Source of the DNA: Fimbriosthenelais zetlandica
Lineage: Eukaryota
DNA: 64,000 nucleotides
NCBI GenBank assembly: GCA_977030845.1
Contig: OZ365109.1
Span: forward strand, 53,630,001-53,694,000
Direction: 5' to 3'
Each line of letters starts with the position of its first letter. Position 1 is the first letter of the stretch. Below are positions 30,501 through 63,700 of the stretch, piece after piece. The translations under genes and the position numbers were made by a program. The notes under the pieces are model-generated. The model did no database searches. It was not told the DNA's origin and was given only the letters and a program-made list of their open reading frames with translations.

Positions 30501-33500
30501 TTTCTGTATTTCAGTGCAAAACTATTTTCTCTTCAAAGGTAGAAATTCATAACATTTATAGTAAATGGTGAATTCAATAATAAGAAGGCCTAACGTTAGG
30601 ACACCACTCTTTTTCTGCTAATCACATAGATGTAGACATTAATTGATTAGCTGTTTAAGTTTTAAAATTCTTATAGTACCATCTCGCTTTCCCCAATCCA
30701 TGTAGAGATAGGTCCCTTAACAAAGCTTATGTTACTGCCACTTAGCTGATCCCGATCTCCTATAGCTACTTCAGAGAGAGCCAGACAAGCCTGTATGCCA
30801 TTAGACAGCGCAGCCACCGGGGAGAGCTCTCTTCCTGTTAGAGTAGTTCCATTAGTAACCACAAGGGGGCCAGCCCTGTCTGTGAGGCTTCACCGAGATT
30901 TGAGGGTATGAATATTAGGTGTGACAACCACATATCCTCCCTTCTCTGATGCCAGATCATGGCTCTATCCCTGATTGTCACATCCAGTACATTCGTTACA
31001 CCAACAACTTCGCGTGGGATGATATTCTAGTTTAGATCATTGCTTCCAAAGGTTCATTGCATTTTGGTAGATCATAACAAAAAAGTCATCTATGCCCATT
31101 GGATCATTAGAGTGATAAGCACTAATGCAATACAGAATAAATAGGGATGGCTTGTGACAAACGCTTCATCCATAAGTTTGAATATTGTCCCAGTGATCTG
31201 TGAAGCCTACAGATAATTACAATACACATTATAATGAAAGCCTTCATTATATACCTGATGGCGACCCCCAGCTGGTAAGAGAAACTTATTTGTATTCATG
31301 AGGCTATAAAGACCCTATCTAACCTCCAGCGGAAGGTGGAGGTCATTGGCCTGATATAGGAGCTAGGTATAATCAAGGCAAACCATGGCATTCATTAACT
31401 ATGGTGGAGAACTCAGCCATCTCCACTTTACTGCCTAAAATAAGGCAAAATCAGAGGGGAAAAGGCACTTAAGGTAAGGATTTATCTGTGGGAGGATTTT
31501 GGGTCATAATGAAAAGATCCCCGATGCACGTGGTCTGACATTTTCGCAATACATGTACATAGATTGAGGACCAACACCTGCGTTCATTCGAGATGAAAAT
31601 ATCGAGAATGGAAAAAAACTTATAAAACAAATCTTTAACTTACTTGAGATCTTCCAGCTCGTAATAGACATTGGTTGCTTGGTCCAGGACGTATATTTTC
31701 CTGGTGGGAGCTTCAAAGTAGACCATGGAGAGAGACTCCGGAAAGGAGCGCACAAAGAGCGCACGGACCGTGTCGATCGATGTGACCTCATTAGGTAGGA
31801 GCGCTCGCTTCGTCTCATTTCGGTGAATAAGGAACACCAAACCTGAAACAAGTGAAAAATTTGAAACATGAAAAAGTGTCCAAAAGTCAAAACCAAAAGT
31901 CCATAACTTGGCATAAGTTAATCGTCAAATAATATATATATAGACCTGTACATATCTAAAAGCTTATAAAGAATAAAATGGCTGGAATGAAAAGCTAAAG
32001 ATTCCCCTAGAAAATGTTATTTACGTTATTTAATGAGTGCCTGGGAATTCTTGAAGGGGGTTATCAATGGGAGTAGATGCTAGCGTTTTACAGTAGACGG
32101 CGCCAGCTGCGTGCAGTTTAAGAGCTCGTGTGAGCAGCTCAGAGCTACTCGAATAGAAGCAAGATCGTGGGTGGGAAAGCATTGCCCCACCTATATCTTC
32201 TTGATATACCAACCTTCAGATAGAAAATCTCTAGCTTCTGAAGGTTTCTTTGGAGGTTTCAATGTATTATATGGAGTCTTCCAAGAACTATAGATGATAA
32301 GCTCATCTTATGTGGAATCAACATAAACCAAGTAGGCCATTTCATAACAACCATTATACAACAACAATACCCAACATTGTCCAATTCCATCACTTGTATT
32401 AGTTTAGGGGAAATGCATTATAAACAGCTGGGTTCGTTAAAGAAAAACAGAAAACCCGAGGCTATCCATCTCCTGAAGGGGAGGCATTTAGGGAAGCTTG
32501 GGTCAGTGCAATTGGGGGAGTTAAGCCAGACCATCCCATAAAGATGTAGCAAAACACATCCATTCTGCATGCTCCAAGGAGGAACTCCCCTGATTGGCGC
32601 CATTAAAGTGGAAGCCTGGGAAAATATAAATTGCCCTTATAATTCCAGCCTGTGGGATAATGTTATGCCACTGGGATAGGGCAGTTGGTGCAACAATCAA
32701 GAAATATTAATGATCACATCAGATTTGGAAGGGTTTCTTAAGAAATCTGTGATTTAAATGAACTTGGTTTTAAGTACGGAACATGTAACCTGAAGGCTGA
32801 ATAATGATCTCAACCCTATAGCAATTTCAGCTGATATGAATTTTACATTGTTTCCTAAATTAAACCAGAAGATCTACATCATACTTGAAACTGAAAATTC
32901 TGTAAAGCTGGAATATGGATATGTAACCTCCATGCAACAAATTCGTTCGTTGCTTATAGTAAAATAGATTATTTTGACTTAAAACTAACCTCTCAAGTTA
33001 GATGTACATCCAAACCATGAATATCTGCGATGCCTGCCCATTGTGAACAGTGAAAAATGAGATTGAATACCAAATATTCAGTCTCAAATTATGAAGGAAA
33101 GTAGTGGATCATAGAAATGCAAACTCATCGCTAAATTTCTTCTTGGCCACGAAAATTGAAATGAGGTGTGATGAAGGCAATATTTGTTGCATTCTTTCGA
33201 GGTAATCCTTTTGGTTTCTGTCAGTACTTTCCCATGTTCCTCATTATTAGACTTTGATGAGAATATCTTGGATCGCAGCTCTGTATCCAGTAGAGGTCTG
33301 ATAAACCATCAAAGCCACATTTCTATAGAAGTCCAATCTTCCACTTTCTTCCACTGTTAAATCAATTCATCACATAATGTAAACGTCAGACACGGACTCC
33401 CTCTGTCACGCCTGGAATGGTGTTAATAAGTTTGTGATCCCTTCAAGAGTCACAGACGTACGATCTATTAGCCTACCCAGAACCCACCGTCAGGTAAAAG

Positions 33501-36500: not shown

Positions 36501-39500
36501 TGAAAAGATAAATTGCTATATGTCTGATAAATATATCATTTTACGACGCTTTGTAACAGCTTATCTGTGGAGATATGAACTCCACATGACCCAGAGATAC
36601 ATAGATATAATAATAAGTACCCTGACTGGTTGCCCCCTCCATCATCGGTCCTTCCCATACTCCTCCAGGGGAAAGGTCATACACTGGAGCATTAGAAAAG
36701 AAAACTCCACGTGCAGGGTAGACGGGTCATTTCATCTAATAGAGAAAACAAAAAATGGAGATGATAGAGAAGGGGAGAGCGGGAGAGAGAAAGTGGGAGA
36801 GAGAAGAGAGCTTCGGGGAGAAAGGGGATAGAGAAAGATGAGAGAGAAGAGTGAAGCTTAGAAAAAATTAGATAGGAGTGACGAAAGAGGAATGTAACAC
36901 CTCAGAGGGGGGATAACAGAAATATCTCATTTACCTCGAGCCTTTGTATACTCTACTGTAACAGGCCGACGCTTCCTGCAGCATCCGCAGCAACAACCAA
37001 GCAAGCACATGGCTCACACTCCCTTTAACAACTATTCCAGAAGTCTGATAATGTGGAAAGCATCACTGTTGGTATGATAGTCCATCGTTCTCATGATATG
37101 TATCACAACTCCAAGCTGGTACTCCAGTTAAGTGTGTTGGGAAACAGCGCTGTGTGAGTGGTTGCCTTCAGGCTCATTGTGTATGTATACTTGAGTATGG
37201 ACAAGACAACCCTCCACTGCTAATAGTACAAACTTAGCATCTCGTTCCGGGAGGTAGCAACTCACTTAAATCCTCGTTGCTAAGGAGGCTTGGATCTGTT
37301 GTTGCTATGGCGGTAACCAGGGTAACTAGGCACACACGTGAGACAGAAGGCACCACGTGGTCGTTGAGAAAAGGATATACCGAACTGCTACTGGTTGCTT
37401 TTTCCATCCAGTGTAGTTGTTATGTTTCATGAGTATTTATGCGGTTTTTATGAGTACAGGAAAGGATGGGTTTGGCTTTTTAAAGGACTGGTGGGAGGAG
37501 ATGGAAATAGCCAACCTACATGGACTGGGGAGTGATAAAAAGACAATATGAAGAATCGCTCTCGTCTGGGTTAACTGACACTGAGGATCAAAGTAACAGA
37601 TTGGTTCAAATGAGCAGCTCCAACTTTCACCCAGAAAATCTACCTCTAATTGGAGTTACACATTTCAGTGGTGCCCTCAAAAAACAAGGCTTTCCTCAAG
37701 TGAAGGTTGGGAGCTGGGAATATTATCAGTTCCAGATGTTAGTGTTTCTACCTATAGGTATAGAAGCACTTTCCTGCTTCTAACCCAAGCACAAACTTCT
37801 GATAGGACCTACAGGAGTTTTTGGTAAAGGTATGTTTATTCTCAAGAGGTGGAGGGTGATGACACTGGCATGTTTGTTTTTATTCCCGTCTGACCTTTAA
37901 TGTAAAAGAAATGGCAGAGACAGATGAGGGATGGAACATATGGTTCTCTTGATGGTTCTCTTCTATCCAACCTAGGTGGCGACTCTCAGGAAATGTTAAT
38001 GAACTGAGGAAAAATATCACAAAGAACTGAGAAGAATCAGAAGCTATCACTCAGAAGCATTGGTCTGCTAACGTCTTGTCACCCGAGTCAAATATCAAGA
38101 AGATCATTTGAAAGCTGTCATTTCTCCTTCACGGTCTAACATATAGTTTATCATATTTCACCTGAATATTTCAGGATGCATGAAAAATGTGTGACATGGC
38201 AGAATGTCAATATGGGGGGTCTCATACTCTGGGCAGTGTTACTGGAACGCATGTCACTGATAACACCAGGTTCGATTTCCAAACTCATTTTCCATTCAGC
38301 TTCGCACCAAAGCCCACAGCCGGTACACTCGAAGAATGTTACTATTTCCATGGCATGGAACTTTCTGTATACCTTCCTCTCTCCCTCCATCTCTCATTCC
38401 CTCTCATTCATTGGAATCAGTACATATCACTTAGGTGAATGGAAAGCTTCAAGAGGGCAAGGCATGACCAGGAAAAGTCAAGGAGCGCAGCAATAACTGA
38501 GAAAACACCATGGGAAAATGGTGCAAATACATTGACAGAGGCACACCAGACTAAAGTACTTAGCCACCCAGAAGCAAAGCATATGAGCAAATGCCCCTCA
38601 TCCTGGTCCAGTGCTTCTTTTATCTGAGTTTTAGAGGCAGGTATCTAATGTTACCACTGAACAGTTGCCTCCAGGCCAACCCTAAATCTGCACCTGGTGT
38701 TTTTCTGTCACCACAGATACCATATACTGTCTCTCATCCGCTTGTGGTTCCCCGTTGAAGCACCAGAGGGAGGCAGTGAGCGCGGGTGGTACGCTATAGA
38801 GATGGCTTAGAGGATGAAATACATCATCAGATATCAACTTCTCTCCGTGTAACTGAATCAAATAAGTGATATTGTTACTCCGGAGATGACAAATATCTTA
38901 GAACAGGTGATCGATGGGATAGGAATATTAAGAATCTGACCATATTTAGGGGAGGGATATGACCAGAATGGGACCTAATTATTCAAAGGTAATTCATAAA
39001 ATAAAAATTCCATTATATCAAGACAGTGAGATTGATCTGATGAAATGTTATCAGTTGTGCATAAACTTTGCATAAAATGATGACTATCAGAGAAGCATAA
39101 TTTCCCCTGAACCTAATATCTGTAACAATAAACGTCTGAGCAAATTATTACTCCTTCTACCTGTCACATCATGGTAACTTGAGGTAACCTCGAGACCCCA
39201 AACAAGTATTCAGGTGACGGTTTGACAACACTGGGAGGATTCAGTCCTGTCTCCAGTCGGGAACCAGCTAAAGAAGGCCTAAGTACTTATTGAATGTCAT
39301 CAGAATGTTATTAAAACGGCTGAATTTCCATTTCCAAATACATTTTGGTGGTTGCATGATGACATTGTTCTAAAGAGAATCCTCTCAATCGGTATCTATG
39401 GCCTCAAGTGTTATAACATGAACAATTGCTCAGGAAATGGCGAGGAATCTGTCAGAACCTCGAGACAAATTCAACAAGAACAATTAGATAATTAGTTTAA

Positions 39501-42490
39501 AGATTTCCAAGCAGGCATTTTATAGAAGTAATTAGTGATCAATATCCTCAAGGAAACAATTTATTCCCAATTGTTTCAGAATATGAATCAAAGAGAGATG
39601 TGGGTTCCCCGTTCACAGGTACAAATTCCAGGCCAAAAATGTTCCTTTTGTCCGTTGCTATGGCAACCACAATGAGAGAGGCGCCCTCTCAGATTAGCAT
39701 TGATTTCCGTTCATGAACGTAAACGGCCAAAGACATTAGATGGGTTTAACAAAGGAAATACGGAGGGAAATTGTGATAAATTGACTGAAGGTTGTGCTCC
39801 ACAATTTCCTTAAGTATTTCAAGATTGAGAGTTGAGAGACCAAAGACAGTGAGAGTATTTTGAGCTATAATCATCATTCAAGTAATTTTTCTGAGCATTG
39901 TCATTGATATAGACCAAAGTTAATCGAGAACAAGCGTGACAGAGAGGGAACTGTAGTGGTTAAGAAAAGCGAAGACTACTACTGCGTGCCACGTTTTGTT
40001 GGTATAATAATGATGCAAAGGGAGGGTACACAAATCAAGTAATAGTTTTGAGTAATAGTTGTTCAACAGTATGTATTGATGTTAATCTTAGATAGATAAA
40101 AATTAATTTTTATAGATCAGTACAGGATAAGGGATTTATAGGACAGTATAATATTTTAAGAATCTCTCCTGTCTTTGCATGTTTTCTTCTTGATATGTCT
40201 TGAAAAGAATCCCTTAAAAGGAAGCAAAACATCATGGGTGTAGGACCTCTGGTCTCTTTTAGAGAGCAGTCATTCATAAGGAAGATCTATGGTAGGTCTC
40301 CATTTAGAACATGTCCTATATAGTACCTTAACCCTAAACACCACAGGTCCATGTTTGAAAAGACAGGCAATTTATCTTCTAGTACAGCTGGTATTGGACG
40401 GCGGTTTTGAGTTCTCAAAGGCCAAACTGTTGAGCTGATGCTGATCAATTTAATACTTCTACCATTGATCTAAAATATAGTGGACATTAAATCTGACACC
40501 AATATGAACGAACAGTCATTCAGCTTGCCATGAGATAGAAACTTTGACCAACATTCATTTTAGTGAATCCTGCATCACAGAATTTCAATCATAATGTCAG
40601 AAAGTTTTTTCACATAAGCCATGACATACCAAGGAGGAAGGCATCATAATAAGTTGGATCAAGCATGACCGAGGCAGGCTACTCATCTCATCCTCAGGGG
40701 AAATGGCAATTAAGATCTGACCACAAAAGATTAAGCACAAACCTGATGTATTTATGCCATTAAGCTTTCCATGTCAATGAGCTTTCATTAAGCTTACCAT
40801 GTCCCTGCGGTTAGTGAATAGCCTTGAAAATGTTAACAAGCTGCCATAAATATCAAAGCAGCCTGTCAACACAGGCACTACAGGTCCCCTCCACAAGGTG
40901 TTGACGCTTATGAAGGTTCATTAAAATTTAAATAAAATACCAATCTATTAATAATGGCCAATATGTCCTATAATTATAGGTATAATAATATAACGATAGG
41001 ACAAATTACAGACTAATTAATTCATTATTAAAACGAATTCTGTGGCATATATTGAATATTAGAGTCAATTCTCAGGCAGAAAGTAGTATTTTGCCACGAG
41101 GATCTATAGAGTGCTTTTCATTCCATTACATGCAGACGATGAAGTTCAAAAGCACAAAATACAAAGCTTGCTTTATTCATCCCGTGGGAAATTACATACC
41201 ATACTAATTAGTGCTTAACTGGATCAATAAACCCCGTATTACGCGGTAAAGAGGTAAGGATTTTCAATGTTAAACAATGCACTGGAACCCAAAGAGGAAA
41301 GATTAGGGTTTGAAATCTTACTGTAAATGGGTTAAAATTTGCTGCCATGATGCCTGATGAATTTGATGTACCTTCAAATCTTTACAATATGTATTCAGGC
41401 CGTTTTTTTCTCGAATGAAACACTTCTATATGACATTGAGGAAAGACTGTCTATGACCAGAATATTTCAAACCATATAAGCATAGGCTAAGCCATGTCTA
41501 AGGAAGTGCAATGAGGACTGCAATCTAAATACAGTTGTCAATCCAATCTGACAGAGGAAATCCGGGTCAGTCAGGCTCTCAATATGGCAGTACTGGCCTA
41601 TGTTTGAGGGGAATATCCTGAATCTTTATGCGTTTTTGTAATATCTAAATCAAGGCCAAGGGTTCTGAGGGCAGAAAGAGAAAGCTATGTTCATGAGCAA
41701 ATATCAAGATTCCATTTCAAATCATCGTTTCCTGAGTTCGGACAAGGCCTTTTTTTAATGGTTTCTCAGCTGAACTTGTTTATGTGACAATTCTCAGCGG
41801 TTCCAGATTTACATAGCTTTCACTAATCCCAAGGCTAAACTGAAACAAATTCTTCTTGCTGATCAGCTCAAAGAAATCCCTTGAAATAAGAGATTTAGCT
41901 TCTATTCCCTCAGCTGCGCGCTGGGTTCAGAACAGCATCCAATTTGTGTGGACTGCTGTGTTTCCTCTAATCCAGAGCTTAGAGAAATAACTCAAGTCTT
42001 CACACCGCTGTTTAAAGCCTTTCTCAAACTCCTTCCTCTTCACAAAATCTGTTCTATTCTCTATGGCGAACTTCTGGGAATTCATTCCAAGCCAGCCCGA
42101 GTTCCTTCCAGTCCATCCTATTTCCAAACTTTTCAAATCAAAAACTACAAATGGAATATATATACTAGAATCGCTATGATGAATTTCCAACCTAAGTAGT
42201 ATAATATTAGTCCATTGACTCAGGCTGGAGTGTAGGTCATCAATCACGGACACCAATCCATCCATCTATAAAGTGATCAGTGCTAGAGAAAGAAGCACAG
42301 AAAGAAAGGCAATCTACTTACCTAATGGCTTTTCAAGCGTCTTGTTCGGGCTTCTTACGACGGGTAAGCTTGACCTAAGTCGTCCCCCTCGCAGGAAGCC
42401 CCCTTCCCCCATCATCTCGTCTTCTGACCCCTCTCCAACCTCGGGCGGACCCGGGTGTCCAGCAGCCTTCTTCTGCTCCTCTGCTCGCCT
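1..42490 (-). CDS. SRCIN1/KIAA1217-like: Spliced core CDS of an SRCIN1/KIAA1217 (sickle tail)/CG32809-family actin- and Src-regulatory scaffold; 13 exons, 3' end outside the window
   Basis: join on minus strand: 42490-42322, 31842-31644, 19448-19265, 12989-12794, 9565-9400, 8958-8810, 3832-3642, 3401-3283, 2924-2794, 2410-2335, 1444-1361, 896-752, 525-1. Total 2334 nt = 778 codons, no stop, all GT-AG with matched phases. Recognised family motifs: RSSLPVVRSPNKTLEKPLGLVFL..ETKRALLPNEVTSIDTVRALFVRSFP, YYELEDLKDVKDRAVLKIY, RSGSATP..RMDKMEAQLANL, EMEVVVREEK, RCKKLTGTLYTLKRLASVQ (family assignment from recall, not a database search). Confidence 0.93.
752..896 (-). CDS. Core exon 12: (R)LASVQDEKNPQP...LLENIQAMVPDHQARVQSLE
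   Basis: Acceptor ttttgttatcag, donor gtaatt; phase 2 to 0; family-like PDH..R motif. Confidence 0.92.
1361..1444 (-). CDS. Core exon 11: (K)YIQLEAQRLDTSLKRCKKLTGTLYTLK(R)
   Basis: Acceptor attaatag, donor gtgagg; phase 2 to 2; conserved RCKKLTGTL motif. Absent from the ORF track. Confidence 0.92.
2335..2410 (-). CDS. Core exon 10: (G)KYPLLTEQMKSVMAGEMEVVVREE(K)
   Basis: Acceptor tctctttccag, donor gtgagt; phase 1 to 2; EMEVVVREEK motif. Confidence 0.92.
2794..2924 (-). CDS. Core exon 9: DLESAVEELRSDVLNKKCRVQNTEVESMALALSNISKALADLK
   Basis: Acceptor ttaatttttcag, donor gtgagt; phase 2 to 1; coiled-coil, family-like. Confidence 0.92.
3283..3401 (-). CDS. Core exon 8: EVLSTVPGAQDVPVRASRARVDHSMKVYNDDTKRVEQDL
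   Basis: Acceptor tcttttcag, donor gtaagt; phase 0 to 2. Confidence 0.9.
3642..3832 (-). CDS. Core exon 7: LSDVSSATPTPQP...KELKSELRHLRRMQLANAESMRETFQQTFLKIK
   Basis: Acceptor tgtttcag, donor gtgagt; phase 1 to 0; coiled-coil. Confidence 0.92.
8810..8958 (-). CDS. Core exon 6: RNRMDKMEAQLANLAAWVQTAVVQREPGG...SDTSAKS
   Basis: Tandem acceptor ttttttag/cag, donor gtcagt; phase 2 to 1; corresponds to the family ME.QxAxL motif. Confidence 0.9.
9400..9565 (-). CDS. Core exon 5: (M)GIIPNQRHSVAYIPEGG...DYYEGSSRSGSATPTASDQEA(S)
   Basis: Acceptor cttcctctttcag, donor gtgagt; phase 1 to 2; RSGSATP motif. Confidence 0.88.
11104..11155 (-). other. Candidate non-coding alternative first exon, GC-rich, ending ...ggcggcgcacA|gtgagt (5' end uncertain)
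   Basis: No internal ATG; consensus donor at 11103-11098; its last A plus TG of exon 9565 forms an in-frame AUG. Confidence 0.5.
11156..11183 (-). promoter_or_regulatory. Paired CRE sites (TGACGTCA 11161-11168, TGACGTAA 11176-11183) followed by a TATAT element on the minus strand
   Basis: Read directly from sequence; immediately upstream of the candidate exon ending at 11104. Confidence 0.6.
12794..12989 (-). CDS. Core exon 4: AKAASLPAQSNFIYQQEMAQYG...SSPSRTHPIPQ (Pro/Ser/Gln-rich linker)
   Basis: Acceptor gtctttgcag, donor gtgagt; phase 0 to 1 bridges its neighbours; GC-rich relative to the intron. Confidence 0.82.
13283..13298. repeat. (AG)8 microsatellite
   Basis: Direct read. Confidence 0.85.
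15228..15360. repeat. Degenerate minisatellite, core GCAGYTYGR..CAR, 21-nt spacing at 15277/15298/15319 with looser copies at 15228, 15246, 15344
   Basis: gcagcttggagccagt / gcagctcgggtccagt / gcagtttgagaccaat / gcagcttggattcagt. Confidence 0.6.
19265..19448 (-). CDS. Core exon 3: (K)DVKDRAVLKIYETEAPSVRSPSRSP...PPRNFDQ
   Basis: Acceptor ctttctttgcag, donor gtaagt; phase 2 to 0; continues the domain from exon 2. Confidence 0.92.
23570..23652 (-). CDS. Candidate alternative first coding exon MDELNRLYVYKARPGRDQMLPKIAYYR(R)
   Basis: Strong Kozak accATGG, upstream in-frame stop, donor aag|gtaagg in phase 2 matching exon 19448. Confidence 0.58.
24648..24683 (+). repeat. G-rich (GGGAGT)n repeat, G-quadruplex-forming motif
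   Basis: Six runs of three or more G. Confidence 0.6.
26299..26385. repeat. Local duplication: tctttgttcagccgtg twice (26325, 26362) with tgatacatt three times
   Basis: Direct read. Confidence 0.7.
31644..31842 (-). CDS. Core exon 2: (G)LVFLIHRNETKRALLPNEVTSIDTVRALFVRSFPESLSMVYFEAPTRKIYVLDQATNVYYELEDL(K); AIP3-like domain
   Basis: Acceptor ttgtttcag, donor gtaagt; phase 1 to 2; the most conserved block of the family. Confidence 0.95.
33643..33656. promoter_or_regulatory. RFX X-box, one mismatch (TTAACCATGGCAAC), in a GC-rich island with E-box CACGTG at 33690-33695
   Basis: Match to GTNRCC(N0-3)RGYAAC except the first base. Confidence 0.4.
36935..37010 (-). CDS. Candidate alternative first coding exon MCLLGCCCGCCRKRRPVTVEYTKAR(G)
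   Basis: In-frame tga then gccATG; donor gag|gtaaat in phase 1 matching exon 31842; Cys cluster plus basic patch. Confidence 0.62.
37276..37359. promoter_or_regulatory. RFX/E-box cluster: half-sites GTTGCTAAGG and GTTGCTATGG, X-box GTAACCAGGGTAAC (37313-37326), CACGTG at 37335 and 37354
   Basis: Read from sequence; about 270-350 nt upstream of the MCLLG ATG on the minus strand. Confidence 0.55.
39654..39667. promoter_or_regulatory. RFX X-box GTTGCTATGGCAAC
   Basis: Canonical 14-mer X-box. Confidence 0.55.
42322..42490 (-). CDS. Core exon 1: RRAEEQKKAAGHPGPPEVGEGSEDEMMGEGGFLRGGRLRSSLPVVRSPNKTLEKPL(G)
   Basis: Acceptor ggtttccag, donor gtaagt; phase 0 to 1; RSSLPVVR motif. Confidence 0.93.
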
Positions 42491-52803: not shown

Positions 52804-53675
52804 CCTTTGCCACTGTATAAGACCAAGCCTTTGTGAGGGTGTGACCAAAGTAGCGCATTGGGCCTAACACTTGATGTAGATAGGGTACATGTATGCACAT
52901 GGTGCATGCCATGTATACATGTACCTACACTGCATATAATTCATTATTGACTGAAAACCTGCAATGCATCTATACTGCATGCATTACTTTGGTATACGGT
53001 TACCTTGAGTAATATAGCCACTTGCCACTATACATTCAAAGGCTTACATTAAAGGATATGTAACTTATGACTCTCACTATCTAAAGGCAGCTAGGCCTAA
53101 TTCTATGATACTAAAAGGTATAGGCAAACTTCATAATTATAATATCACAGACTGATAATCTAACTATCAAGGTCTAAATTCTGCCCTTGACGACTAATCG
53201 AAAGGATTTCTTTATGAATTGACCACATAGTTTTATTGTCGGGCAGAATATACAAGGTCACTCCCACAATAATAAGCATTTTATGGAGATATGTTTATTA
53301 TCTGAGATGATTATTCTGAATCGTACATCACAGAGAGATCAGGAAGATTAGGAGATCAGGAGGCGTGGAGTGTTTAAGCATAAATGTACACAGACTCCGT
53401 ATGGGTGCCTCTGTTCCTGAGTTCAAAGTAAATGTGGGAGGGATATGAAAGCAGACATCAGGTGATACCCTATAGAATTTCCTATAAATGGAAAACCACA
53501 CGTTTCGGGACTTCAGACAGAAAACTCTTGGTGTACATTTTTTTTAATTTGACTTTTTAGTTGCAAAAACACCTTTAGAAAGACTCTGGTCGAAATCTTC
53601 AAACAAGATCATCTATACTAAGCCTGGTTTGATGTTGAATACAGTTATATTAGATAGAGACGGGGATATTCTTAC

Positions 53676-53685
53676 CGATTTCCTC
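53676..53685 (-). CDS. Candidate 10-nt microexon GAGGAAATCG, (R)RKS
   Basis: ctttttcag|GAGGAAATCG|gtaaga; converts phase 2 (exon 60741-60793) to phase 0 (exon 42490). Confidence 0.62.
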
Positions 53686-55530
53686 CTGAAAAAGTTCATT
53701 ATAGTCCCTCAAAGTCCTTTCTGGCTGCCATTTTCTTTGATATATCGATGGTAAAGGTACTCCGTATCACCATTAATAGGTGTAAAAATATCCAGGATTT
53801 GGGGTTGAAAGTTAAGACCTGACGTGTTCTTTATGTTGTATGTATACACTTTTGAGTTCAAGGAAAAACTTTTCCTGGAAACGGTATACATTGAAAACTA
53901 GACTTGTACTGTGGACCCTACAGATATGGTGCCTATTATTAGCAATCTCTTATGTATCCATATCAATCGGGTCATAATATTAAAGTGGCTCTATTACTGA
54001 ATTTTCTTTCAGATCATTAGTTCATCTCTATGATCCACTGCCGTTCCTCTGGACAGCACTGAACTTGAGATCTTCCAAGCCAATGCCCAACCGAGATTCT
54101 GGGTCAACAGTGCAAATCCAGGTACAGCTTTAATTAGATAAAACATGTTGTATAATTATATGGCCTCTTTCATTCGGGAGGTCATGTATCAGATTTAGAG
54201 TGATGTTGGTGATTGTATTGGTAGGTAATGTATCATGTCGGATTAACGCGCTCCTGGTGTCAATAATCTGGATCAGACAGATTTAATCTAATCTGGGATG
54301 GATTCAGCTCTGGTCAATAAATCATGTCAATCGCGATCATGTACACTGGTCATACTATCTATAGTGGATATGGGGAAGAAGGTTCAGAGACTTCCATAAT
54401 GCATTGCAATCCTTTATCAGCTATCGTAGAATCTATATGATAAGAATATATATGCTTGTATACCATGAAGAAATCAGATAATTGGGATCCAATTGCCAAA
54501 AAGATAATGCGATAGAGAGAACTAAAGCCCCCATCCTATACCAGCGATTATGAAAGCGAGATAAAATTCCATTGCCAAATATAATTATCCAGTTCATAAA
54601 TGACTGCAAGTTATATAAAACACCCAGAAATTATGATAGAACCAGTGTATATGGACGTAAATATACAGGAATTAACCTAGTGGTGACATTGAAATATCGA
54701 AGTGCCAGGAGGCCTTGGTATCCGTGGTGGGCGTTTTCTCGCCATTGCGGTTCAACAAACACGTACAGGGCTTTGGCCTTAAGCCACTTTGACTTTTTGA
54801 AAGGGCCACTGGGTTAAAGCATTTAGCCCGAAGAGATCAAGGTCGATATGTCAGTTAAAGGCTATTCCACATCACGAAATACGGCATGAATAACATAGAT
54901 GTACATCCATAATTATGAATAACATGCATGTGCACGCGAACAATATGCACATAAATATACATGACTGTATGATTATGTGTTTTGGTCAACGGTCAACCAT
55001 CAATAACTTTAAAAAAAGGTGAAAAAATATTTTATCCAATATGGATTTCTATCCTAGTCTAATAGAATTAGTACTGTCACCAGGAATTCCAAAAAAATCC
55101 TTTAGAAAATCCCATGAGTTCATCCTTAGTGAAGAGGGAGTGGGCGTGAATGTTTTAAGTCCTTTCAGTGTTAGAAGCTAAGTCTCAATGAAGGTTGAGG
55201 GTAAAATGCCTTCAGAACCACAAAATGTCAGCTTGTCTCCACTCGAGACATGATAACTACCCTGACCTGTTTCTAAAACATACACTTTGCATAACAATAA
55301 AGTAAACAACCCATGGAAAAATTCGCAAACACAAAACAACAAAGACAAAGGCAGTCCGCCATTCCATTTGGATCATTATGTCATGACGAATACCCGATTT
55401 TTAATCGCTCTCATGAAATGATCGAGTGAGATATTAAATTTTAGTTGGCATGGTTATTTTGGTGGATTAGTTTGAGGCGTTTCCAGCAGGTGGCAGGGCA
55501 CGTGAGTGAATCTCCCCTTAGGTGATTGGT

Positions 55531-57027: not shown

Positions 57028-60000
57028 CTCGCATGTTGGGTCTTGATTAGTATTTATATAACCAATTTTATGGAATGTGTAATATGGAATAATTCCTGCC
57101 AGATGGTGGGTTTGTATTACATAATGATAAATTCAATTCACTTCTTCCAGTTATTACTTGAAGATGATAATGGAAGAAATTAATCTTGCATAGGTATAGA
57201 GTTCAAGGGAAAATACTGAACCATTGGGAAAAAAGTTAAAGAGATCCTTGGTATTTCGAGAATCATGTTCTTGTGACAAAGGTGATTGTATACAATCACT
57301 ACTTCGTGCAAAGGCACTTTATTCTAGTATTAAAAAAAACAAGGAGCACACTTGTAGCATGCTCCCCCGGGAGTATGGTTGGATAAATTAAGTACGCCAT
57401 AAAAGGCCATTTTGCATAACATTACAGATTTATATTGTACATGTCGAGAATATTATTACTCCCTAGAGCCTGTACATGATGCAACAGCTGGTGGGATGAA
57501 TCAAATTTTTCTTTTTCAATTTTTATATAGCTTCTATATGTAGTTGTAATATTTCTAGCTATCATCTTCGAGCACTATGTACGTGTACTATTTGTTTATT
57601 GGAACTTTAGATCAGGTTCTATTGGGGAACCCTTTAAAAATGACAGTCATTTCTAGGCAGCAGTGGGTGTCCTGAACCTTGTGTTTTATACGGTGATACA
57701 TTATGCAGGGCACAGCTTCGCTATCCAATTAGAAAGCCATAGATCAGATGTTTTTATTAAGGGAACCAGTCGGCTATGGACAATTCAGCTCACAATATGG
57801 AATCAAAACAACGTGCTGACGAAGCAACTTTTGATGTTTTCTATCCAATGACTGGTACTGAAAATGTTTTGACGTCTTTCTGCCAAGTACCTTGTCTAAT
57901 GGAAACAGATAGGTGATTTCTAACAAAGGTGAATATTTAAACTGCATGACAGCAAGGCACAAAATCATGGTTTTTGCTGTCAGACAGTAATGACACACCG
58001 TGTGTGCAGACAGTCGAAGCAATGATCACTGACTATTGGTTTAAAATAGACTTGCAGATATGCATTAACAATTTTTATTGTTTTCCGTATCCTGGTGGGA
58101 ATACACATTTATAATAGACAAAATTAATAATAAACTGGCAATAAAGTAAGAAATTCATATATTATGAAGGAGTAAATGTATGAGAGAATACATTTGAATC
58201 CAACTTACATAAATTCTCAATGTAATTTAAAGCAATATCATACACCTGTCGAATATTAGATGCATGGTCATAATGTGGGGAATCGGGGATAAATCCATTC
58301 TGCAAACCAACTAAACCGTAGAGAGCAAGATATGTCATTATAATTCTTCAGAGCAATGGAAAAGTTGAACACTTATCAAATAATTTGACAGGGGTGAAGC
58401 AAGGCTAAATGGGAGTGTGTTTAGGAGGTCACGGTCCCAATCAGACCATTAGTGGAGTGAGTTGCTCCCCTTGCCCTCTAGAGACTCTATGCTCCTCATA
58501 TAACCCTGAGAGATGAGTGGGTATAGGGGTAGGCCTGCCTATAGGAGGTGGTAGAGAATGGGGGTGGAAACACAATAGCCTCACCCTGATTTCCATGTCG
58601 TCCATGATCCCAGGACCGTCCCAGAGGTGCCCAATCCATTTAGAGAGGGCCTTAAAGGACCAAAAGACCCCTTTTATCCATGCAGAGGGATTTTAATCTG
58701 CACAGGCACACATACCCCGTGGTACCTTATACTTGTGCATGCTAAGCCTAACCCCCTCATATAAAGGACCTGCCTCCAATGCTTCATTCAATAATAAGTA
58801 CCTATCCATGTATAATAGTGATTGATGGATTTGGAAATTTAATTTTTGCGAGTAGCAATGTGCCCTGCATATGAGCTTAAAAGCTTTCAAAAAAGCTCTC
58901 AAAAGTGGCTAAATATAGATTTATAATCATGAAAATAGCCCATATACATCATTATAATACATATAATAAGTCCATAAATCTGGCTATGAAAGTACATACA
59001 TAATGTTAGTGCTACATGTGATGGCAGTTTTAACCGATTAAGACAAGCCATGCTTCTCATTAAACACGACCCCCTTGGGTTCAAAACGCCCAAAATAATC
59101 ACATTACATCAAACGTTATGTCAGCCTAATTTGACTCCGCGGAGTAGCCTTACCCCTCGGGGGAATGGTCATACAGCATACTACACTTACTACGTTATGA
59201 CCCAGATACTGGCCTACATGTAAAACTGCTTCACAGAGAGGCCAGCCATTATGGATGTGCTGCCTGATCTCTGGCAGGATTCCAAAGCTGCCTTTTTTGG
59301 CATTGGAAGCACTGGATGCCCATGTATTCTGCCCGCTCCAGCGATGCTCTCGCCCACGTGACTTGTGTTCTCGTATAATAACGCCATGTTAACGTGATTA
59401 AAGGTCTCTATATTATCGTTAATACACAAGGCAGTAAATGGTCCGTAATACTATAGAGTTACTACAATGGTGTGAACCGTCAATGTTCCCCAAACATCAG
59501 GCTAAATATTACCACGGACGTAACTAGTGTTCGCAATGCCACACCCATTTATTTCCAAACAAAACATGCCATTTCCACATCTAGAATTCGGGTTACTATT
59601 AGACGAAGGCAGAATAGCACAGCATTAACATAACCATATTATCCATTAACCATCCCAATCAGTCAAACAATGACATTGAACATTTTTATAATATGCTCCA
59701 AAAATACAATCAAGGTTCTCTATTTCAAAATATTGCCATAGACTAATGCCACTTTCCATGTGCTACTCGCATGAGACCATTCAAGGGATTACAGAACCAA
59801 CCTACTATGACAGGGGTACGATGTATACTCTATTCGCTATACAAAGCTGGAAATATATACACATACGCATATGATTCATATCTTTGTAATATGTAATTTG
59901 GGAATAAAAAAGGTCCGAGCTTTTGATGAAGCCGTATAATAATGCCGACTATGGGGGTTTATCTGGTCCCGATCCATGAGCCATGAGTCATCAACAATCA

Positions 60001-60405: not shown

Positions 60406-60740
60406 GTGATATTTGCCATAACACGTCTTTGGTCTCCATGCCAACGGTTTATATCCCCGTCAAATCTCAGTCTGGTTCCATGGATTATTTAGAAACTAAA
60501 TCAAATGAAAGATATGAAAGGAAACAGGCTTGAAAGGAAACAGAGATTGGTTCATAACAATATAATTGTAATGGCAAGAATGACCTATTCCATTTAAATA
60601 GATAAAACAAAATTGTAGCATTTTTATGAATCTGTTCCACTAAATACTGCATGTAGAACCCCTCTCACATAGTTATGAAGCCTATTTCAGGATAGACCCT
60701 TTGTTATGAGTGAACTACATTCCTTCGGGTAAGCCATTAC

Positions 60741-60775
60741 CTCAATCGCAGATCAAAGGAAATGCATCCACCCAT
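60741..60775 (-). CDS. Candidate initiating coding segment MGGCISFDLRL(R), inside exon 60793-60741
   Basis: Long pyrimidine tract tttatctcttcttgcctttcatctcatctcgttttcactcctggcag, ttcATGG start, donor gag|gtaatg in phase 2; MGxxxS myristoylation consensus with Cys4. Confidence 0.6.
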
Positions 60776-63700
60776 GAACCCCAGCCCTGAAGCCTGCCAG
60801 GAGTGAAAACGAGATGAGATGAAAGGCAAGAAGAGATAAACCACAGGTAGGCCAGGGATATGCTGGTACTGAATCCAGCATTGTAATGCCTAATGAGGCA
60901 AGGATATACCAGCATAATTATGGTATTCTGTAGTCATTAAGGGGTATGATCCAGTTATTAAAAGGATCAATATTAACCCGGCAAACTAAGCCTATAGGGG
61001 TTATAATACAAGCCTATGGGATCTGTTACAACAAGGAAGCGCTGCTAATTGGGTCTTAGTTGCAGTTCCCTATTGTTAACATATCAAAGTCAGTGAGAGG
61101 CATAATTCGATCACTGAGGTGGATATATGGACACAATACAATATTCTATATAGGCTTACAGCTTTCTTCATAATCAGTTTAATCTTGGGACTTTTGTACC
61201 TTTTCATGAACACAGACTTGGGGGATCTGCAATGCATTACTGCCTGAGATTGCACCACTTCAATCACTAGATAGATTCCTCTAATTTTGTATCAAAAAGT
61301 GTTATTTTCCCCTCTACAATGGATGGAGATGAATGTGGATTAATGGAGAAGGATTAGGAGAGATCACATTAGTTAGATTGCATTAGATTCATCTCAGTCA
61401 TAGACAATTGGCCTAGGGGATGTAGGGGTGAGGAAGGGGGAATGGGAGGGGGATGTTGGCCTACAGAGTAGAGGGAAATGGGAGACATGTCCTTCGCTTT
61501 GCCTGGGGAGCAGACCTGTTATCACAGGACCCTGGATTGGAGGAGAGGGGAAAAGTGGGGAATGGGAACAGGGAACGGAGAGAGAGATGGGGAGAAAGGG
61601 CTTGGTGAACTGGATGAATTAGGCTGGTTGACAAGGAAGGACATACTCACACAGTAGTGAGTGATATGTTTTATTCATGCTTTATATCCAGGCATTGAGG
61701 AACAAAGCCAGGATGAGGGAAATATGGGAACACCCGTTATGAAAGTCTATGAATGAACTTATCTCCAGTTGTACGCGAATTAATGGAGATAATGGATGAA
61801 GAATACTGCATGTATTTTACTGTGAAGTTATGAATCAATAGGCAGCGTGTATTGTTCTATAGTGCCCTGGGATGAGATGTCCTCAAATGACATACAATAA
61901 TTATGATTTATTGTCAGTATTTCTCCATATGGAAATATTCAGGAATAAATTCCAGCAATATTTGGAATGGCAGCTAATGAAAAGAGTGCTTGGATAAGAG
62001 AATGATTATAATGATCAAATAAATTTGAATAGAATCACATTTTTCAATTTATGGAGGAAATTAAAGATAATTCATGAAGAATGATCGACTGAGGCAATGT
62101 ATTAATATGAAGAATTTCCTCCATTTCCCTGAATATTATTCTGAAATTTACATCTTCTAGGCAAAATAGAAATGTATTTAATGTAATGCATTATTCAGCG
62201 TGTACTTTTCTTATACCAACTAGCAATAGCAGTACACAGATCAGCCATCAGGGGCGTCAAATTATGCATACAAACCTCAGATACGCTGGAATGCACTTTC
62301 AATGTTAATCATATTCATGAATTAGTTTAATGGAATCTCAATGGCATGTTTGTTGAAGCCGGCATGTAAACAAACTCGAGTGCAGAGGATGATTTTATGT
62401 TAATGAGGGTTATCCATCATGTCACGACCTGCCTTCAGCAGCGAGGTTATCCAGAACTGGGTCAAGGTGCTTAGCAATGGGGAAAAGCAAGGTCATATAG
62501 AGGAGCCATTATTGGCAGCAATGGCTGGCAATCTCTGCAGTGCAATCGATGTTAATAACCCACAAAAAAAGCTACAAAAACAGAGATTCCTGTCTAAAAA
62601 CAGAAGTGAAGTTGACAGAGGTATTGGCCTGTGCCTGCCACATTTCTCCACTTTCAGATAATTCAATTCGGAGTTATGCAGCAAGGCCTTTGTTTGCTGA
62701 GCCTTGCTCTTCACAACAGGAGGTTGGCAGTGTTTTTGTCTGATATCATGCGCGTTAACAATGCCCCCTTTGACAATGGGGTCGCTTGGAGAGGGTGTCT
62801 GGCTTGCCCCAAGGGAATGGCCTAATTTGGGAAGCCCCGGGGGTGCTGTGATATTCCCCGTTTCCTCCCCCACTTTTCCCCCTTCCCTCGCGCGTTTCCC
62901 CTGTGGTAATTTTCTGTCATCGTGATTAATATGCTAGGAGTCAGTAGGATCGGGCATGGAGAGTACACCAGGGTCAGTGAGTGCAAATGTGTTACTGCAA
63001 AAAGAAATGCACTGAAATATTAATGTTATGTGGACAGCAGAAGTGTTGTTGATTTCCTGGCTACTCAAATATTTGGTCCCCTGATATGGACATTAAGTGG
63101 ACGCACTTGTTCTGTGCACAGTGAAAAGCTTACGGTCAATTCACTTAATGTGTTGTTTGCACAAAAGAGATTTAATTGTAACCGAATCAGCCAGACCATA
63201 TTTTCAGTGGATCCTTAATATATTCGCTTCAGTGGGCATCATGAAACATATTATGAAGGGGACACGATCAGCATGCAGTATATAGTATAGTATAACCTGT
63301 TATAATACTGTAATAAGGCACATAGCGAGGCAGGGATAAGAGCAGTAAACGCCTGCCCTGTCTAAGATATTCATGTTCCTAATACCTTTAGATACACAGA
63401 TCTCATCAAAGCAGCCGCACAAATAAAAACTGAAATAAATCCACATCAGAAGACTAATTTGTATGCAATGGATGACAAAGACAACTTTAGCGGACATATA
63501 AAACCAAGAAAAAAATGTTAGTTTGTGCCTGTGAGGTACAAATTGTGCTCTGTGATTCTAGTAGGTGGATGGTATGTGACTGGCATAGAGACGGGGCTGG
63601 GTTTGCCCAGGCGCCTAATGTATCATAATCTAGTTAGCCCGTCCTATTTGTTGACCGTGTCTGGTCCTTTTCCCCCCACAGGCCTGTGTACATTTCACAC

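What the first reader, a model, noticed from the sequence alone, without database searches (positions are those of the whole stretch)
53676..53685. Frame-shifting 10-nt microexon that acts as an on/off switch for the myristoylated isoform
Seen: inclusion gives MGGCISFDLRLRRKSRRAEEQKK. Skipping it from the MGGCIS exon runs into TGA inside exon 42490, overlapping the ATG-ATG pair. Established: RRxS is the PKA consensus, and myristate plus polybasic plus phosphorylation is the electrostatic switch of MARCKS and Src. Most regulated microexons preserve frame. Inference: these 10 nt complete the polybasic patch, add a PKA site and gate production of the isoform. Inclusion must be coupled to promoter choice, since a phase-0 start such as 58605 needs it skipped.
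Basis: partly seen in the sequence, partly recalled or inferred. Interest (0 to 1): 0.74.

Follow-up and report, generated by a model that had tools for sequence, protein, structure and literature searches.

The report
Candidate 10-base exon, still unproven
The 10 bases do sit between splice-like signals and would put a lipid-anchor start back in frame in a p140Cap/KIAA1217-type scaffold gene. But signals this good turn up by chance in an intron this long, and no RNA or cross-species evidence could be found, so it remains an untested guess.

Summary
The sequence facts are correct. On the minus strand, GAGGAAATCG (53685..53676) lies between ttttcag and gtaaga. Including it joins the MGGCIS exon (phase-2 donor at 60741) in frame to the common exon 42490..42322. 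Skipping it runs into a TGA overlapping the ATGATG pair.

The signal is no better than chance. Dinucleotide shuffles of the 18.25-kb intron give 1.07 (length up to 10 nt) or 2.2 (up to 30 nt) equally good frame-restoring cassettes. The real intron holds 1 and 2.

The 3' splice site lacks the marks of regulated microexons: no UGC, a short pyrimidine tract and a 20-nt AG-free zone. Three weaker routes also restore frame.

The unusual part is the 53-nt MGGCIS exon. It has a strong acceptor, and the Gly2/Cys4/Ser6 start followed by a donor is expected 0.015 times per strand. Because 53+10 = 63, the pair could also be an in-frame insert in longer isoforms.

No RNA run was listed. The one readable relative showed no counterpart in 69 kb, but it is distant and its common exon was not reached.

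My odds: real microexon about 0.27, ordinary intron sequence about 0.6. RT-PCR or long cDNA reads would settle it.

The parts
53676..53685 (-). Candidate 10-nt microexon GAGGAAATCG. With the AG left over from the upstream exon it codes R-R-K-S.
   Evidence: Read. Frame joins checked. The signal is at chance level in shuffles.
53686..53745 (-). Putative 3' splice region of the candidate (…gggactataatgaactttttcag).
   Evidence: AG-free zone 20 nt, 10 of 20 pyrimidines, no TGC within 40 nt, no CTRAY branch motif. This is about as strong as the acceptor of exon 42490 (AG-free zone 17 nt, 11 of 20 pyrimidines).
53668..53675 (-). Putative donor TCG|gtaagaat.
   Evidence: GTAAGA is a good consensus match, comparable to other donors in this gene.
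60741..60793 (-). 53-nt exon carrying ATG (60775) MGGCISFDLRL. It has a phase-2 donor GAG|gtaatg, and the intron read-through hits TAA at once.
   Evidence: acceptor ...ctcatctcgttttcactcctggcag, AG-free zone 67 nt, 15 of 20 pyrimidines, UGC at -33. It is open in phase 0 from the acceptor (ASGLGFMGGC...). The MGxC..S start plus donor is expected 0.015 times per strand.
42322..42490 (-). Common exon RRAEEQKK...GGRLRSSLPVVRSPNKTLEKPLG (phase 0 in, phase 1 out).
   Evidence: The exon-level homologue P0001 is 77% identical and starts at the same FQ|RR boundary. tblastn hits to family proteins.
42410..42415 (-). ATGATG pair. The TGA at 42414..42412 ends the 37-codon frame that results when the 10 nt are skipped.
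58585..58605 (-). Candidate phase-0 start exon MDDMEIR (AGG|gtgagg). It is also readable as a 66-nt open exon from an acceptor at 58650.
   Evidence: No homology or RNA support was found.
31644..31842 (-). Next conserved exon, (G)LVFLIHRNETKRALLPNEVTSIDTVRALFVRSFP...YYELEDLK. It identifies the gene family.
   Evidence: Homologous exon ORFs carry Pfam PF03915 (AIP3). The exon is single copy in this genome.
62412..62474 (-). Conserved non-coding island 1.6 kb upstream of the 53-nt exon. It could mark a promoter or enhancer.
   Evidence: 73% identity over 63 nt (E 9e-5) to the relative's intron. It was the only intronic match in 69 kb.

Best explanation
Most likely the 10 bases are ordinary intron sequence that happens to lie between an AG and a GTAAG, not an exon. 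The gene is the single-copy p140Cap/SRCIN1-KIAA1217 (AIP3-domain) scaffold gene of an annelid-type worm. Several alternative 5' modules join its common exon at 42490 in phase 0. The 53-nt MGGCIS exon is the odd one out, because its donor is in phase 2. If that exon is transcribed and spliced straight to 42490, its ATG opens a 37-codon upstream frame ending at a TGA that overlaps ATGATG. The transcript would then be non-productive, or would make an N-terminally shorter protein starting at MMGEGG or MGEGG. The 10-nt 'rescue' is the kind of match chance supplies once or twice in an 18-kb intron. What is shown: the coordinates, the frames and the chance expectation. What is inferred: non-use of the 10 nt.
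For: - Shuffle null: 1.07 (length up to 10 nt) and 2.2 (up to 30 nt) equally good frame-restoring cassettes are expected in this intron, against 1 and 2 observed.
- YAG-N10-GTRAG occurs 8 times in the window and 7 times in 69 kb of the relative's intron.
- The 3' splice site has none of the features reported for regulated microexons. Those are UGC near the 3' splice site, a long UCUC-rich pyrimidine tract, a long AG-free zone and a strong branch point (PMC8797185, read; measured here).
- A 10-nt exon breaks the frame of every phase-0 upstream exon, so it would need strict coupling for which no mechanism is visible.
- There is no look-alike and no conserved flank in the relative's 69 kb.
- No transcript-type protein shows the junction, and there is no retrocopy.
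Against: - The MGGCIS start (Gly2, Cys4, Ser6) followed by a donor is itself unlikely by chance: 0.015 per strand per 64 kb.
- It lies on the coding strand in the 5' part of a gene whose family shows lipidated N-termini. p140Cap is drawn with a myristoylation site (PMC7904710). An insect relative starts MGLGCAL. This gene also has a Cys-string start exon in a compatible phase.
- A functional acylation start needs a 3n+1 connector, and the 10-nt candidate has the best donor of the few options.
- Its acceptor is no weaker than that of the confirmed exon 42490.
- The lack of conservation was tested only against one fairly distant genome (exon 1 is 55% identical), whose intron is over twice as long. 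The search did not reach the common exon.
Confidence: 0.6

Rival explanations
1. One reading: a real 10-nt exon that is always included together with the 53-nt MGGCIS exon. The product starts MGGCISFDLRLRRKSRRAEEQKK, that is, a myristoyl/palmitoyl anchor plus a basic patch with an RRKS site. Transcripts from phase-0 upstream exons skip it. A variant of this model has both small exons included together in longer isoforms as an in-frame 21-residue insert (ASGLGFMGGCISFDLRLRRKS), with no lipid anchor.
For: - The frame arithmetic is exact. 53+10 = 63 nt, and it is open from the phase-0 donor of the upstream exon through to exon 42490.
- The splice consensus is canonical: CAG|G ... CG|GTAAGA.
- The acylation motif is rare by chance.
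- Among tiny cassettes with a YAG acceptor and a GTRAG donor, only this one and one 13-nt rival exist in the intron.
- The family has precedent for lipidated N-termini.
Against: - Candidates of this quality are expected by chance.
- The microexon-type cis signature is absent.
- No RNA, no conservation and no annotated homologue with such an N-terminus were found among 155+ family proteins inspected.
- It requires strict coupling between exon choices, because either small exon alone gives a premature stop.
Confidence: 0.27
2. The MGGCIS exon is real and coding, but the frame is restored another way. The options are a GAG acceptor 2 nt inside exon 42490 (giving ...LRLRRAEEQKK), a GAG acceptor 19 nt upstream of it (...LRLRISIGFQRRAEE), or a 13-nt cassette at 60681..60669 (...LRLRLHNYRRAEE).
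For: All three give open, in-frame products. The 13-nt cassette passes the same filters as the 10-nt one.
Against: - Both alternative acceptors are GAG with poor pyrimidine tracts. Established knowledge ranks the acceptor base order as CAG/UAG > AAG > GAG.
- The 13-nt cassette would leave a 59-nt intron and has a weaker tract, 8 of 20 pyrimidines.
- None has any independent support.
Confidence: 0.08

Closest known systems
p140Cap/SRCIN1 and KIAA1217 (sickle tail) scaffold proteins, Pfam AIP3 (PF03915)
   Same: - The gene holds the conserved LVFL..NETKRALLPNE..YYELED exon and downstream AIP3-type exons.
- It has an SLPVVRS motif exon.
- An upstream exon carries 12 YxxV repeats including EPLYSTV, recalling p140Cap's Tyr-rich region with the Csk-binding EPLYA/EGLYA motifs (PMC7904710).
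- p140Cap is also drawn with an N-terminal myristoylation site.
   Different: - This is an invertebrate single-copy gene with several candidate alternative 5' exons.
- The proposed lipid start is Gly2/Cys4 (dual acylation type) rather than the mammalian start.
- It is out of phase with the common exon.
Neural eMIC/SRRM4-dependent microexons (3-27 nt)
   Same: Very short length, canonical AG/GT borders, and location in a neuronal-type scaffold gene.
   Different: - The length is not a multiple of three.
- There is no UGC near the 3' splice site, a short pyrimidine tract, a 20-nt AG-free zone and no strong branch motif (against PMC8797185).
- Flank conservation was not seen.
SH4-type dual-acylated N-termini (Src-family kinases, G-alpha-i) and the myristoyl-electrostatic switch (MARCKS, Src)
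   Same: MGGCIS has Gly2, Cys4 and Ser6. With the 10 nt, a basic run (R10, R12, R13, K14, R16, R17) with Ser15 in an RRKS context follows it. The motif rules come from my own knowledge, not from a tool.
   Different: Nothing shows that this ATG is used or that the glycine is N-terminal, and the exon has its own strong acceptor. Acidic residues (D8, E19, E20) interrupt the patch. No phosphorylation or localisation data exist.
Upstream ORFs whose stop overlaps the main start (termination-reinitiation arrangement)
   Same: With the 10 nt skipped, the MGGCIS frame ends at a TGA overlapping ATGATG.
   Different: The upstream frame is 37 codons, long for efficient reinitiation. The Met pair lies at a position that is an internal conserved Met in relatives (DEMG, DDMMD), so it need not be a start.

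Membership tests
p140Cap/SRCIN1-KIAA1217 (AIP3-domain) gene | Conserved N-terminal-proximal domain exon (LVFLxxxxETKRxLLPNE...YYELED). | tested here: met
   210 library proteins at E<=1e-10, best 73% identity; the homologous exon ORFs carry PF03915; 47% identity to a KIAA1217-like probe.
p140Cap/SRCIN1-KIAA1217 (AIP3-domain) gene | Downstream coiled-coil/AIP3 exons collinear with family proteins. | tested here: met
   ordered tblastn hits from 42484 down to 292 on the minus strand against six family proteins.
Regulated (eMIC-type) microexon | Length of 27 nt or less that preserves the reading frame. | tested here: not met
   The length is 10 nt. Alone after a phase-0 exon it gives a stop. Frame is kept only in combination with the 53-nt exon.
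Regulated (eMIC-type) microexon | UGC close to the 3' splice site, a long UCUC-rich pyrimidine tract, a long AG-free zone and a strong branch point. | tested here: not met
   no TGC within 40 nt, 10 of 20 pyrimidines, AG-free zone 20 nt, no CTRAY. Feature list taken from PMC8797185.
Regulated (eMIC-type) microexon | Conservation of the exon and its flanking intron in related species. | tested here: inconclusive
   There is no look-alike and no shared 12-mer in 69 kb of the relative's intron. However, the relative is distant, its common exon was not reached, and the closer genome (P0001) gave no DNA.
Regulated (eMIC-type) microexon | Inclusion seen in RNA. | not testable with these tools
   No sequencing run was listed, so read laying could not be used.
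N-myristoylated/palmitoylated (SH4-like) start | Met-Gly start with Ser/Thr at position 6 and Cys at position 3 or 4. | tested here: met
   MGGCIS. Chance expectation with a downstream donor is 0.015 per strand.
N-myristoylated/palmitoylated (SH4-like) start | The ATG is the actual translation start of a productive ORF. | tested here: inconclusive
   It is in frame only through the unproven 10 nt or weaker routes. The exon has a strong acceptor and is open upstream of the ATG, so it may be internal.
Myristoyl-electrostatic switch | A basic cluster next to the acyl anchor containing a phosphorylatable Ser, with phosphorylation releasing the protein from the membrane. | not testable with these tools
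   The cluster and RRKS exist in silico only if the 10 nt are included. Function needs an experiment.

The most novel reading that the evidence does not exclude
A real 10-nt frame-shifting microexon is used only together with the 53-nt MGGCIS exon, so two tiny exons act as one unit. From a dedicated promoter (perhaps at the conserved island 62412-62474), the unit would give a dual-acylated, polybasic, RRKS-bearing N-terminus on a Src-regulator scaffold. Any uncoupled inclusion would destroy the frame.
Probability: 0.25. Interest if true: 0.55.

Novelty: not a real feature. Interest (0 to 1): 0.25.

Why it matters
If real, it would be a clear case of an obligatorily coupled pair of tiny exons, one only 10 nt long and frame-shifting. 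The pair would decide whether a p140Cap-type Src/Csk scaffold is made with a lipid anchor. That would bear on how promoter choice and splicing are coordinated, and on how this family is targeted to membranes.

As it stands, the useful result is a caution. In an 18-kb intron, a frame-rescuing AG...GT pair of this quality is expected by chance, so it cannot be taken as evidence for an exon. The part worth testing is the 53-nt MGGCIS exon.

Tried and rejected
- **RNA evidence.** The look-up of sequencing runs failed twice and again later. It then listed no run, either for the exon alone (kind rna) or for 1.5 kb around it (kind any). Read laying could therefore not be used.
- **Transcript-type proteins.** A search with the spliced 72-residue N-terminus found only five exon-level genomic ORFs, none with MGGC. 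A search with the conserved exon found 113 exon ORFs, none from a close relative on a long contig. The representative library gave family members but no MGxC-polybasic N-terminus in lophotrochozoans.
- **Closest relative.** The assembly holding P0001 (ERZ26222911) served no DNA.
- **Paralvinella (L001) and another annelid contig (L002).** The homologous exon starts further 5' or differently, and no MGxC exon lies in the available upstream DNA.
- **Walking the ERZ25767047 contig.** I covered 69 kb downstream of the exon-1 homologue, using the remaining 8 of the 12 look-ups. Only exon 1 and one non-coding island aligned, and the common exon was never reached. An MGFCDL... ORF with a phase-0 donor at rel 64429 is not alignable to MGGCIS and was treated as chance.
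- **Metagenome scans.** Scans for a back-translated MGGCISFD pattern and for the spliced junction both found nothing.
- **Own genome.** No paralogue, no retrocopy and no spliced-junction match.
- **KREAF/YPQYA-type upstream exon.** I searched for one to fix the phase of the canonical isoform. None was found within 80 kb upstream; a KREHF hit at about +47 kb lies in an unrelated-looking long ORF.
- **Longer 3n+1 cassettes.** None of those with good acceptors looks coding.

Full report
**What is in the sequence.** The finding lies on the minus strand. At 53685..53676 the sequence reads aactttttcag|GAGGAAATCG|gtaagaat. Upstream, at 60775, is ATG GGT GGA TGC ATT TCC TTT GAT CTG CGA TTG AG|gtaatg. 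That pattern is unique in the window, and the intron read-through hits TAA at once. Downstream, ggtttccag|AGG CGA GCA GAG GAG CAG AAG AAG opens an exon at 42490 that runs to CCA TTA G|gtaagt at 42322. This is 169 nt, so the end is not at 42340 as first assumed.

Without them the frame is a 37-codon dead end, and its TGA (42414..42412) sits inside ATGATG (42415..42410). The MDDMEIR start at 58605 is phase 0 and joins 42490 directly.

**What gene this is.**
- The next exon (31842..31644) encodes LVFLIHRNETKRALLPNEVTSIDTVRALFVRSFP...YYELEDLK.
- It is 47% identical to a KIAA1217-like probe and hits 210 library proteins at E<=1e-10.
- Its exon-level homologues carry Pfam AIP3.
- Collinear tblastn hits run down to position 292.
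- The gene is single copy in this 447-Mb genome.
- Hits from Paralvinella and other worm assemblies and earlier scan notes indicate an annelid-type animal.
- About 7.4 kb beyond the window's end lies a 422-codon ORF. It starts MPLKKSK, carries 12 YxxV repeats including EPLYSTV, and ends ...PLSQ|gtaagg, a phase-0 donor. It is conserved in a relative (P0156, 55% identity, identical C-terminal end).
- This exon corresponds to the Tyr-rich, Csk-binding part of p140Cap, a protein also drawn with an N-terminal myristoylation site (PMC7904710).
- An alternative Cys-string start exon (37010..36935, phase 1) fits the phase-1 acceptor of exon 31842.

So the gene seems to swap N-terminal modules, most of them joining exon 42490 in phase 0. 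The MGGCIS exon is the exception, with a phase-2 donor.

**Is the 10-nt candidate more than chance?** No.
- YAG-N10-GTRAG occurs 3 and 5 times on the two strands of the window.
- Within the 18,250-nt intron, only two open 3n+1 cassettes pass the filters of a YAG acceptor, at least 7 of 12 pyrimidines and a GTRAG donor. They are this one and a 13-nt one at 60681..60669.
- Dinucleotide-preserving shuffles of the intron give 1.07 such cassettes for lengths up to 10 nt (at least one in 65% of shuffles), 2.2 for lengths up to 30 nt, and 4.2 for lengths up to 120 nt.
- The relative's intron shows seven YAG-N10-GTRAG sites in 69 kb.
- The candidate's acceptor has a 20-nt AG-free zone, 10 of 20 pyrimidines, no UGC and no CTRAY motif. 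It therefore lacks the architecture reported for regulated microexons (PMC8797185).
- It is, however, no weaker than the acceptor of the confirmed exon 42490.

**The part that is not trivial.** A Met-Gly start with Cys at position 3 or 4, Ser/Thr at position 6 and a downstream donor is expected only 0.015 times per strand per 64 kb. The exon also has a strong acceptor 18 nt before the ATG: an AG-free zone of 67 nt, 15 of 20 pyrimidines with UCUC runs, and UGC at -33. It is open from that acceptor. That makes it a 53-nt exon (60793..60741) that may be internal.

Because 53+10 = 63, the two small exons together are frame-neutral between the phase-0 ...PLSQ donor and exon 42490. Together they insert ASGLGFMGGCISFDLRLRRKS, while either alone gives a stop. 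This supports the idea that the pair belongs together. It also offers a reading without any free N-terminal glycine.

Against the pair, a phase mismatch is what a chance ORF gives two times in three, whereas real alternative first exons rarely need a hidden connector. Three other routes also restore frame: a GAG acceptor 2 nt inside exon 42490, a GAG acceptor 19 nt upstream, and the 13-nt cassette. All three are weak.

**Outside evidence.**
- Searches with the spliced N-terminus and with the conserved exon returned only exon-level genomic ORFs.
- Family representatives include an insect MGLGCAL start, but nothing like MGGC plus a basic patch in related phyla.
- The closest relative for exon 42490 (P0001, 77% identical, same FQ|RR boundary) served no DNA.
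- The relative holding the exon-1 homologue was walked for 69 kb downstream. Only exon 1 and a 63-nt non-coding island aligned: window 62412-62474, which lies 1.6 kb upstream of the 53-nt exon, at E 9e-5.
- In that relative no MGGCIS-like exon, no 10-mer look-alike and no shared flank word appeared. Its intron is more than twice as long as ours, and the common exon was not reached, so this negative result is weak.
- Metagenome scans and own-genome searches for the junction or a retrocopy were empty.

**Verdict.** My weighing is:
- about 0.6 that the 10 nt are plain intron, with the MGGCIS frame either an upstream ORF on a leader exon or not expressed at all;
- about 0.27 that the microexon is real and obligatorily paired with the 53-nt exon;
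- about 0.08 that another route restores the frame.

The PKA site and the electrostatic switch are motif-level analogies, based on my own knowledge of RRxS sites and of MARCKS and Src. They rest entirely on the unproven inclusion. One RT-PCR across 60775 to 42322 would decide the matter.

Noticed in passing
window 62412-62474 (minus strand); relative locus L015/L016 region, merged position 40622-40684: This is the only intronic stretch conserved with the relative: blocks CACCTTGACCCAGTT and GGTCGTSACRTGAT, 73% over 63 nt, E 9e-5. It lies 1.6 kb upstream of the 53-nt MGGCIS exon. It has no shared splice sites, so it looks like a promoter or enhancer element (an E-box-like CACGTG in the relative) rather than an exon.
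   Followed up: partly
window 36935-37010 (minus strand): A Cys-string alternative start exon, MCLLGCCCGCCRKRRPVTVEYTKARG|gtaaat. It is phase 1 and matches the phase-1 acceptor of exon 31842, so it would bypass exon 42490 entirely. This is a second lipid-anchor-type N-terminus in the same gene.
   Followed up: partly
L004 7399-8493 (minus strand; 7.4-8.5 kb beyond the window's end): A 422-codon ORF starting MPLKKSKDKKEKEGK, with about 12 Y-x-[ST]-V repeats including EPLYSTV and a clean phase-0 donor PLSQ|gtaagg. It is conserved in a relative (P0156, 55% identity). It is probably the Tyr-rich, Csk-binding-type module of the long isoform.
   Followed up: partly
window 58585-58650 (minus strand): The MDDMEIR start can also be read as a 66-nt exon that is open from the acceptor tcctttaag| (ALSKWIGHLWDGPGIMDDMEIR). 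It would be phase 0 in and out, so it could be an in-frame cassette rather than a first exon. No homology support was found.
   Followed up: no
window 42410-42415 (minus strand): The stop of the frame-shifted MGGCIS ORF overlaps the ATGATG pair (A-TGA-TG). This is a stop/start overlap of the kind seen in termination-reinitiation. However, the Met is at a position that is an internal conserved Met in relatives (DEMG, DDMMD).
   Followed up: partly
L009, about 47 kb beyond the window's end (merged coordinate ~111,150-111,750, minus strand): A long open frame rich in Ser/Tyr (…YFDGYDKIYYYNSEENISNSPQDL…SPKREHFLKLAPG…RRRYFRREIPDIYV…). It could be a further upstream module of this gene or a separate gene. 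It has no match to family proteins.
   Followed up: no
L001 10530-10720 (Paralvinella palmiformis JAODUP010000099.1): In Paralvinella the homologous exon extends further 5' (ERPSDASRRRTTQVV...). The annotation splits it off as an 85-residue 'hypothetical protein', separate from the AIP3 gene 7 kb downstream. That is probably one gene annotated as two.
   Followed up: no
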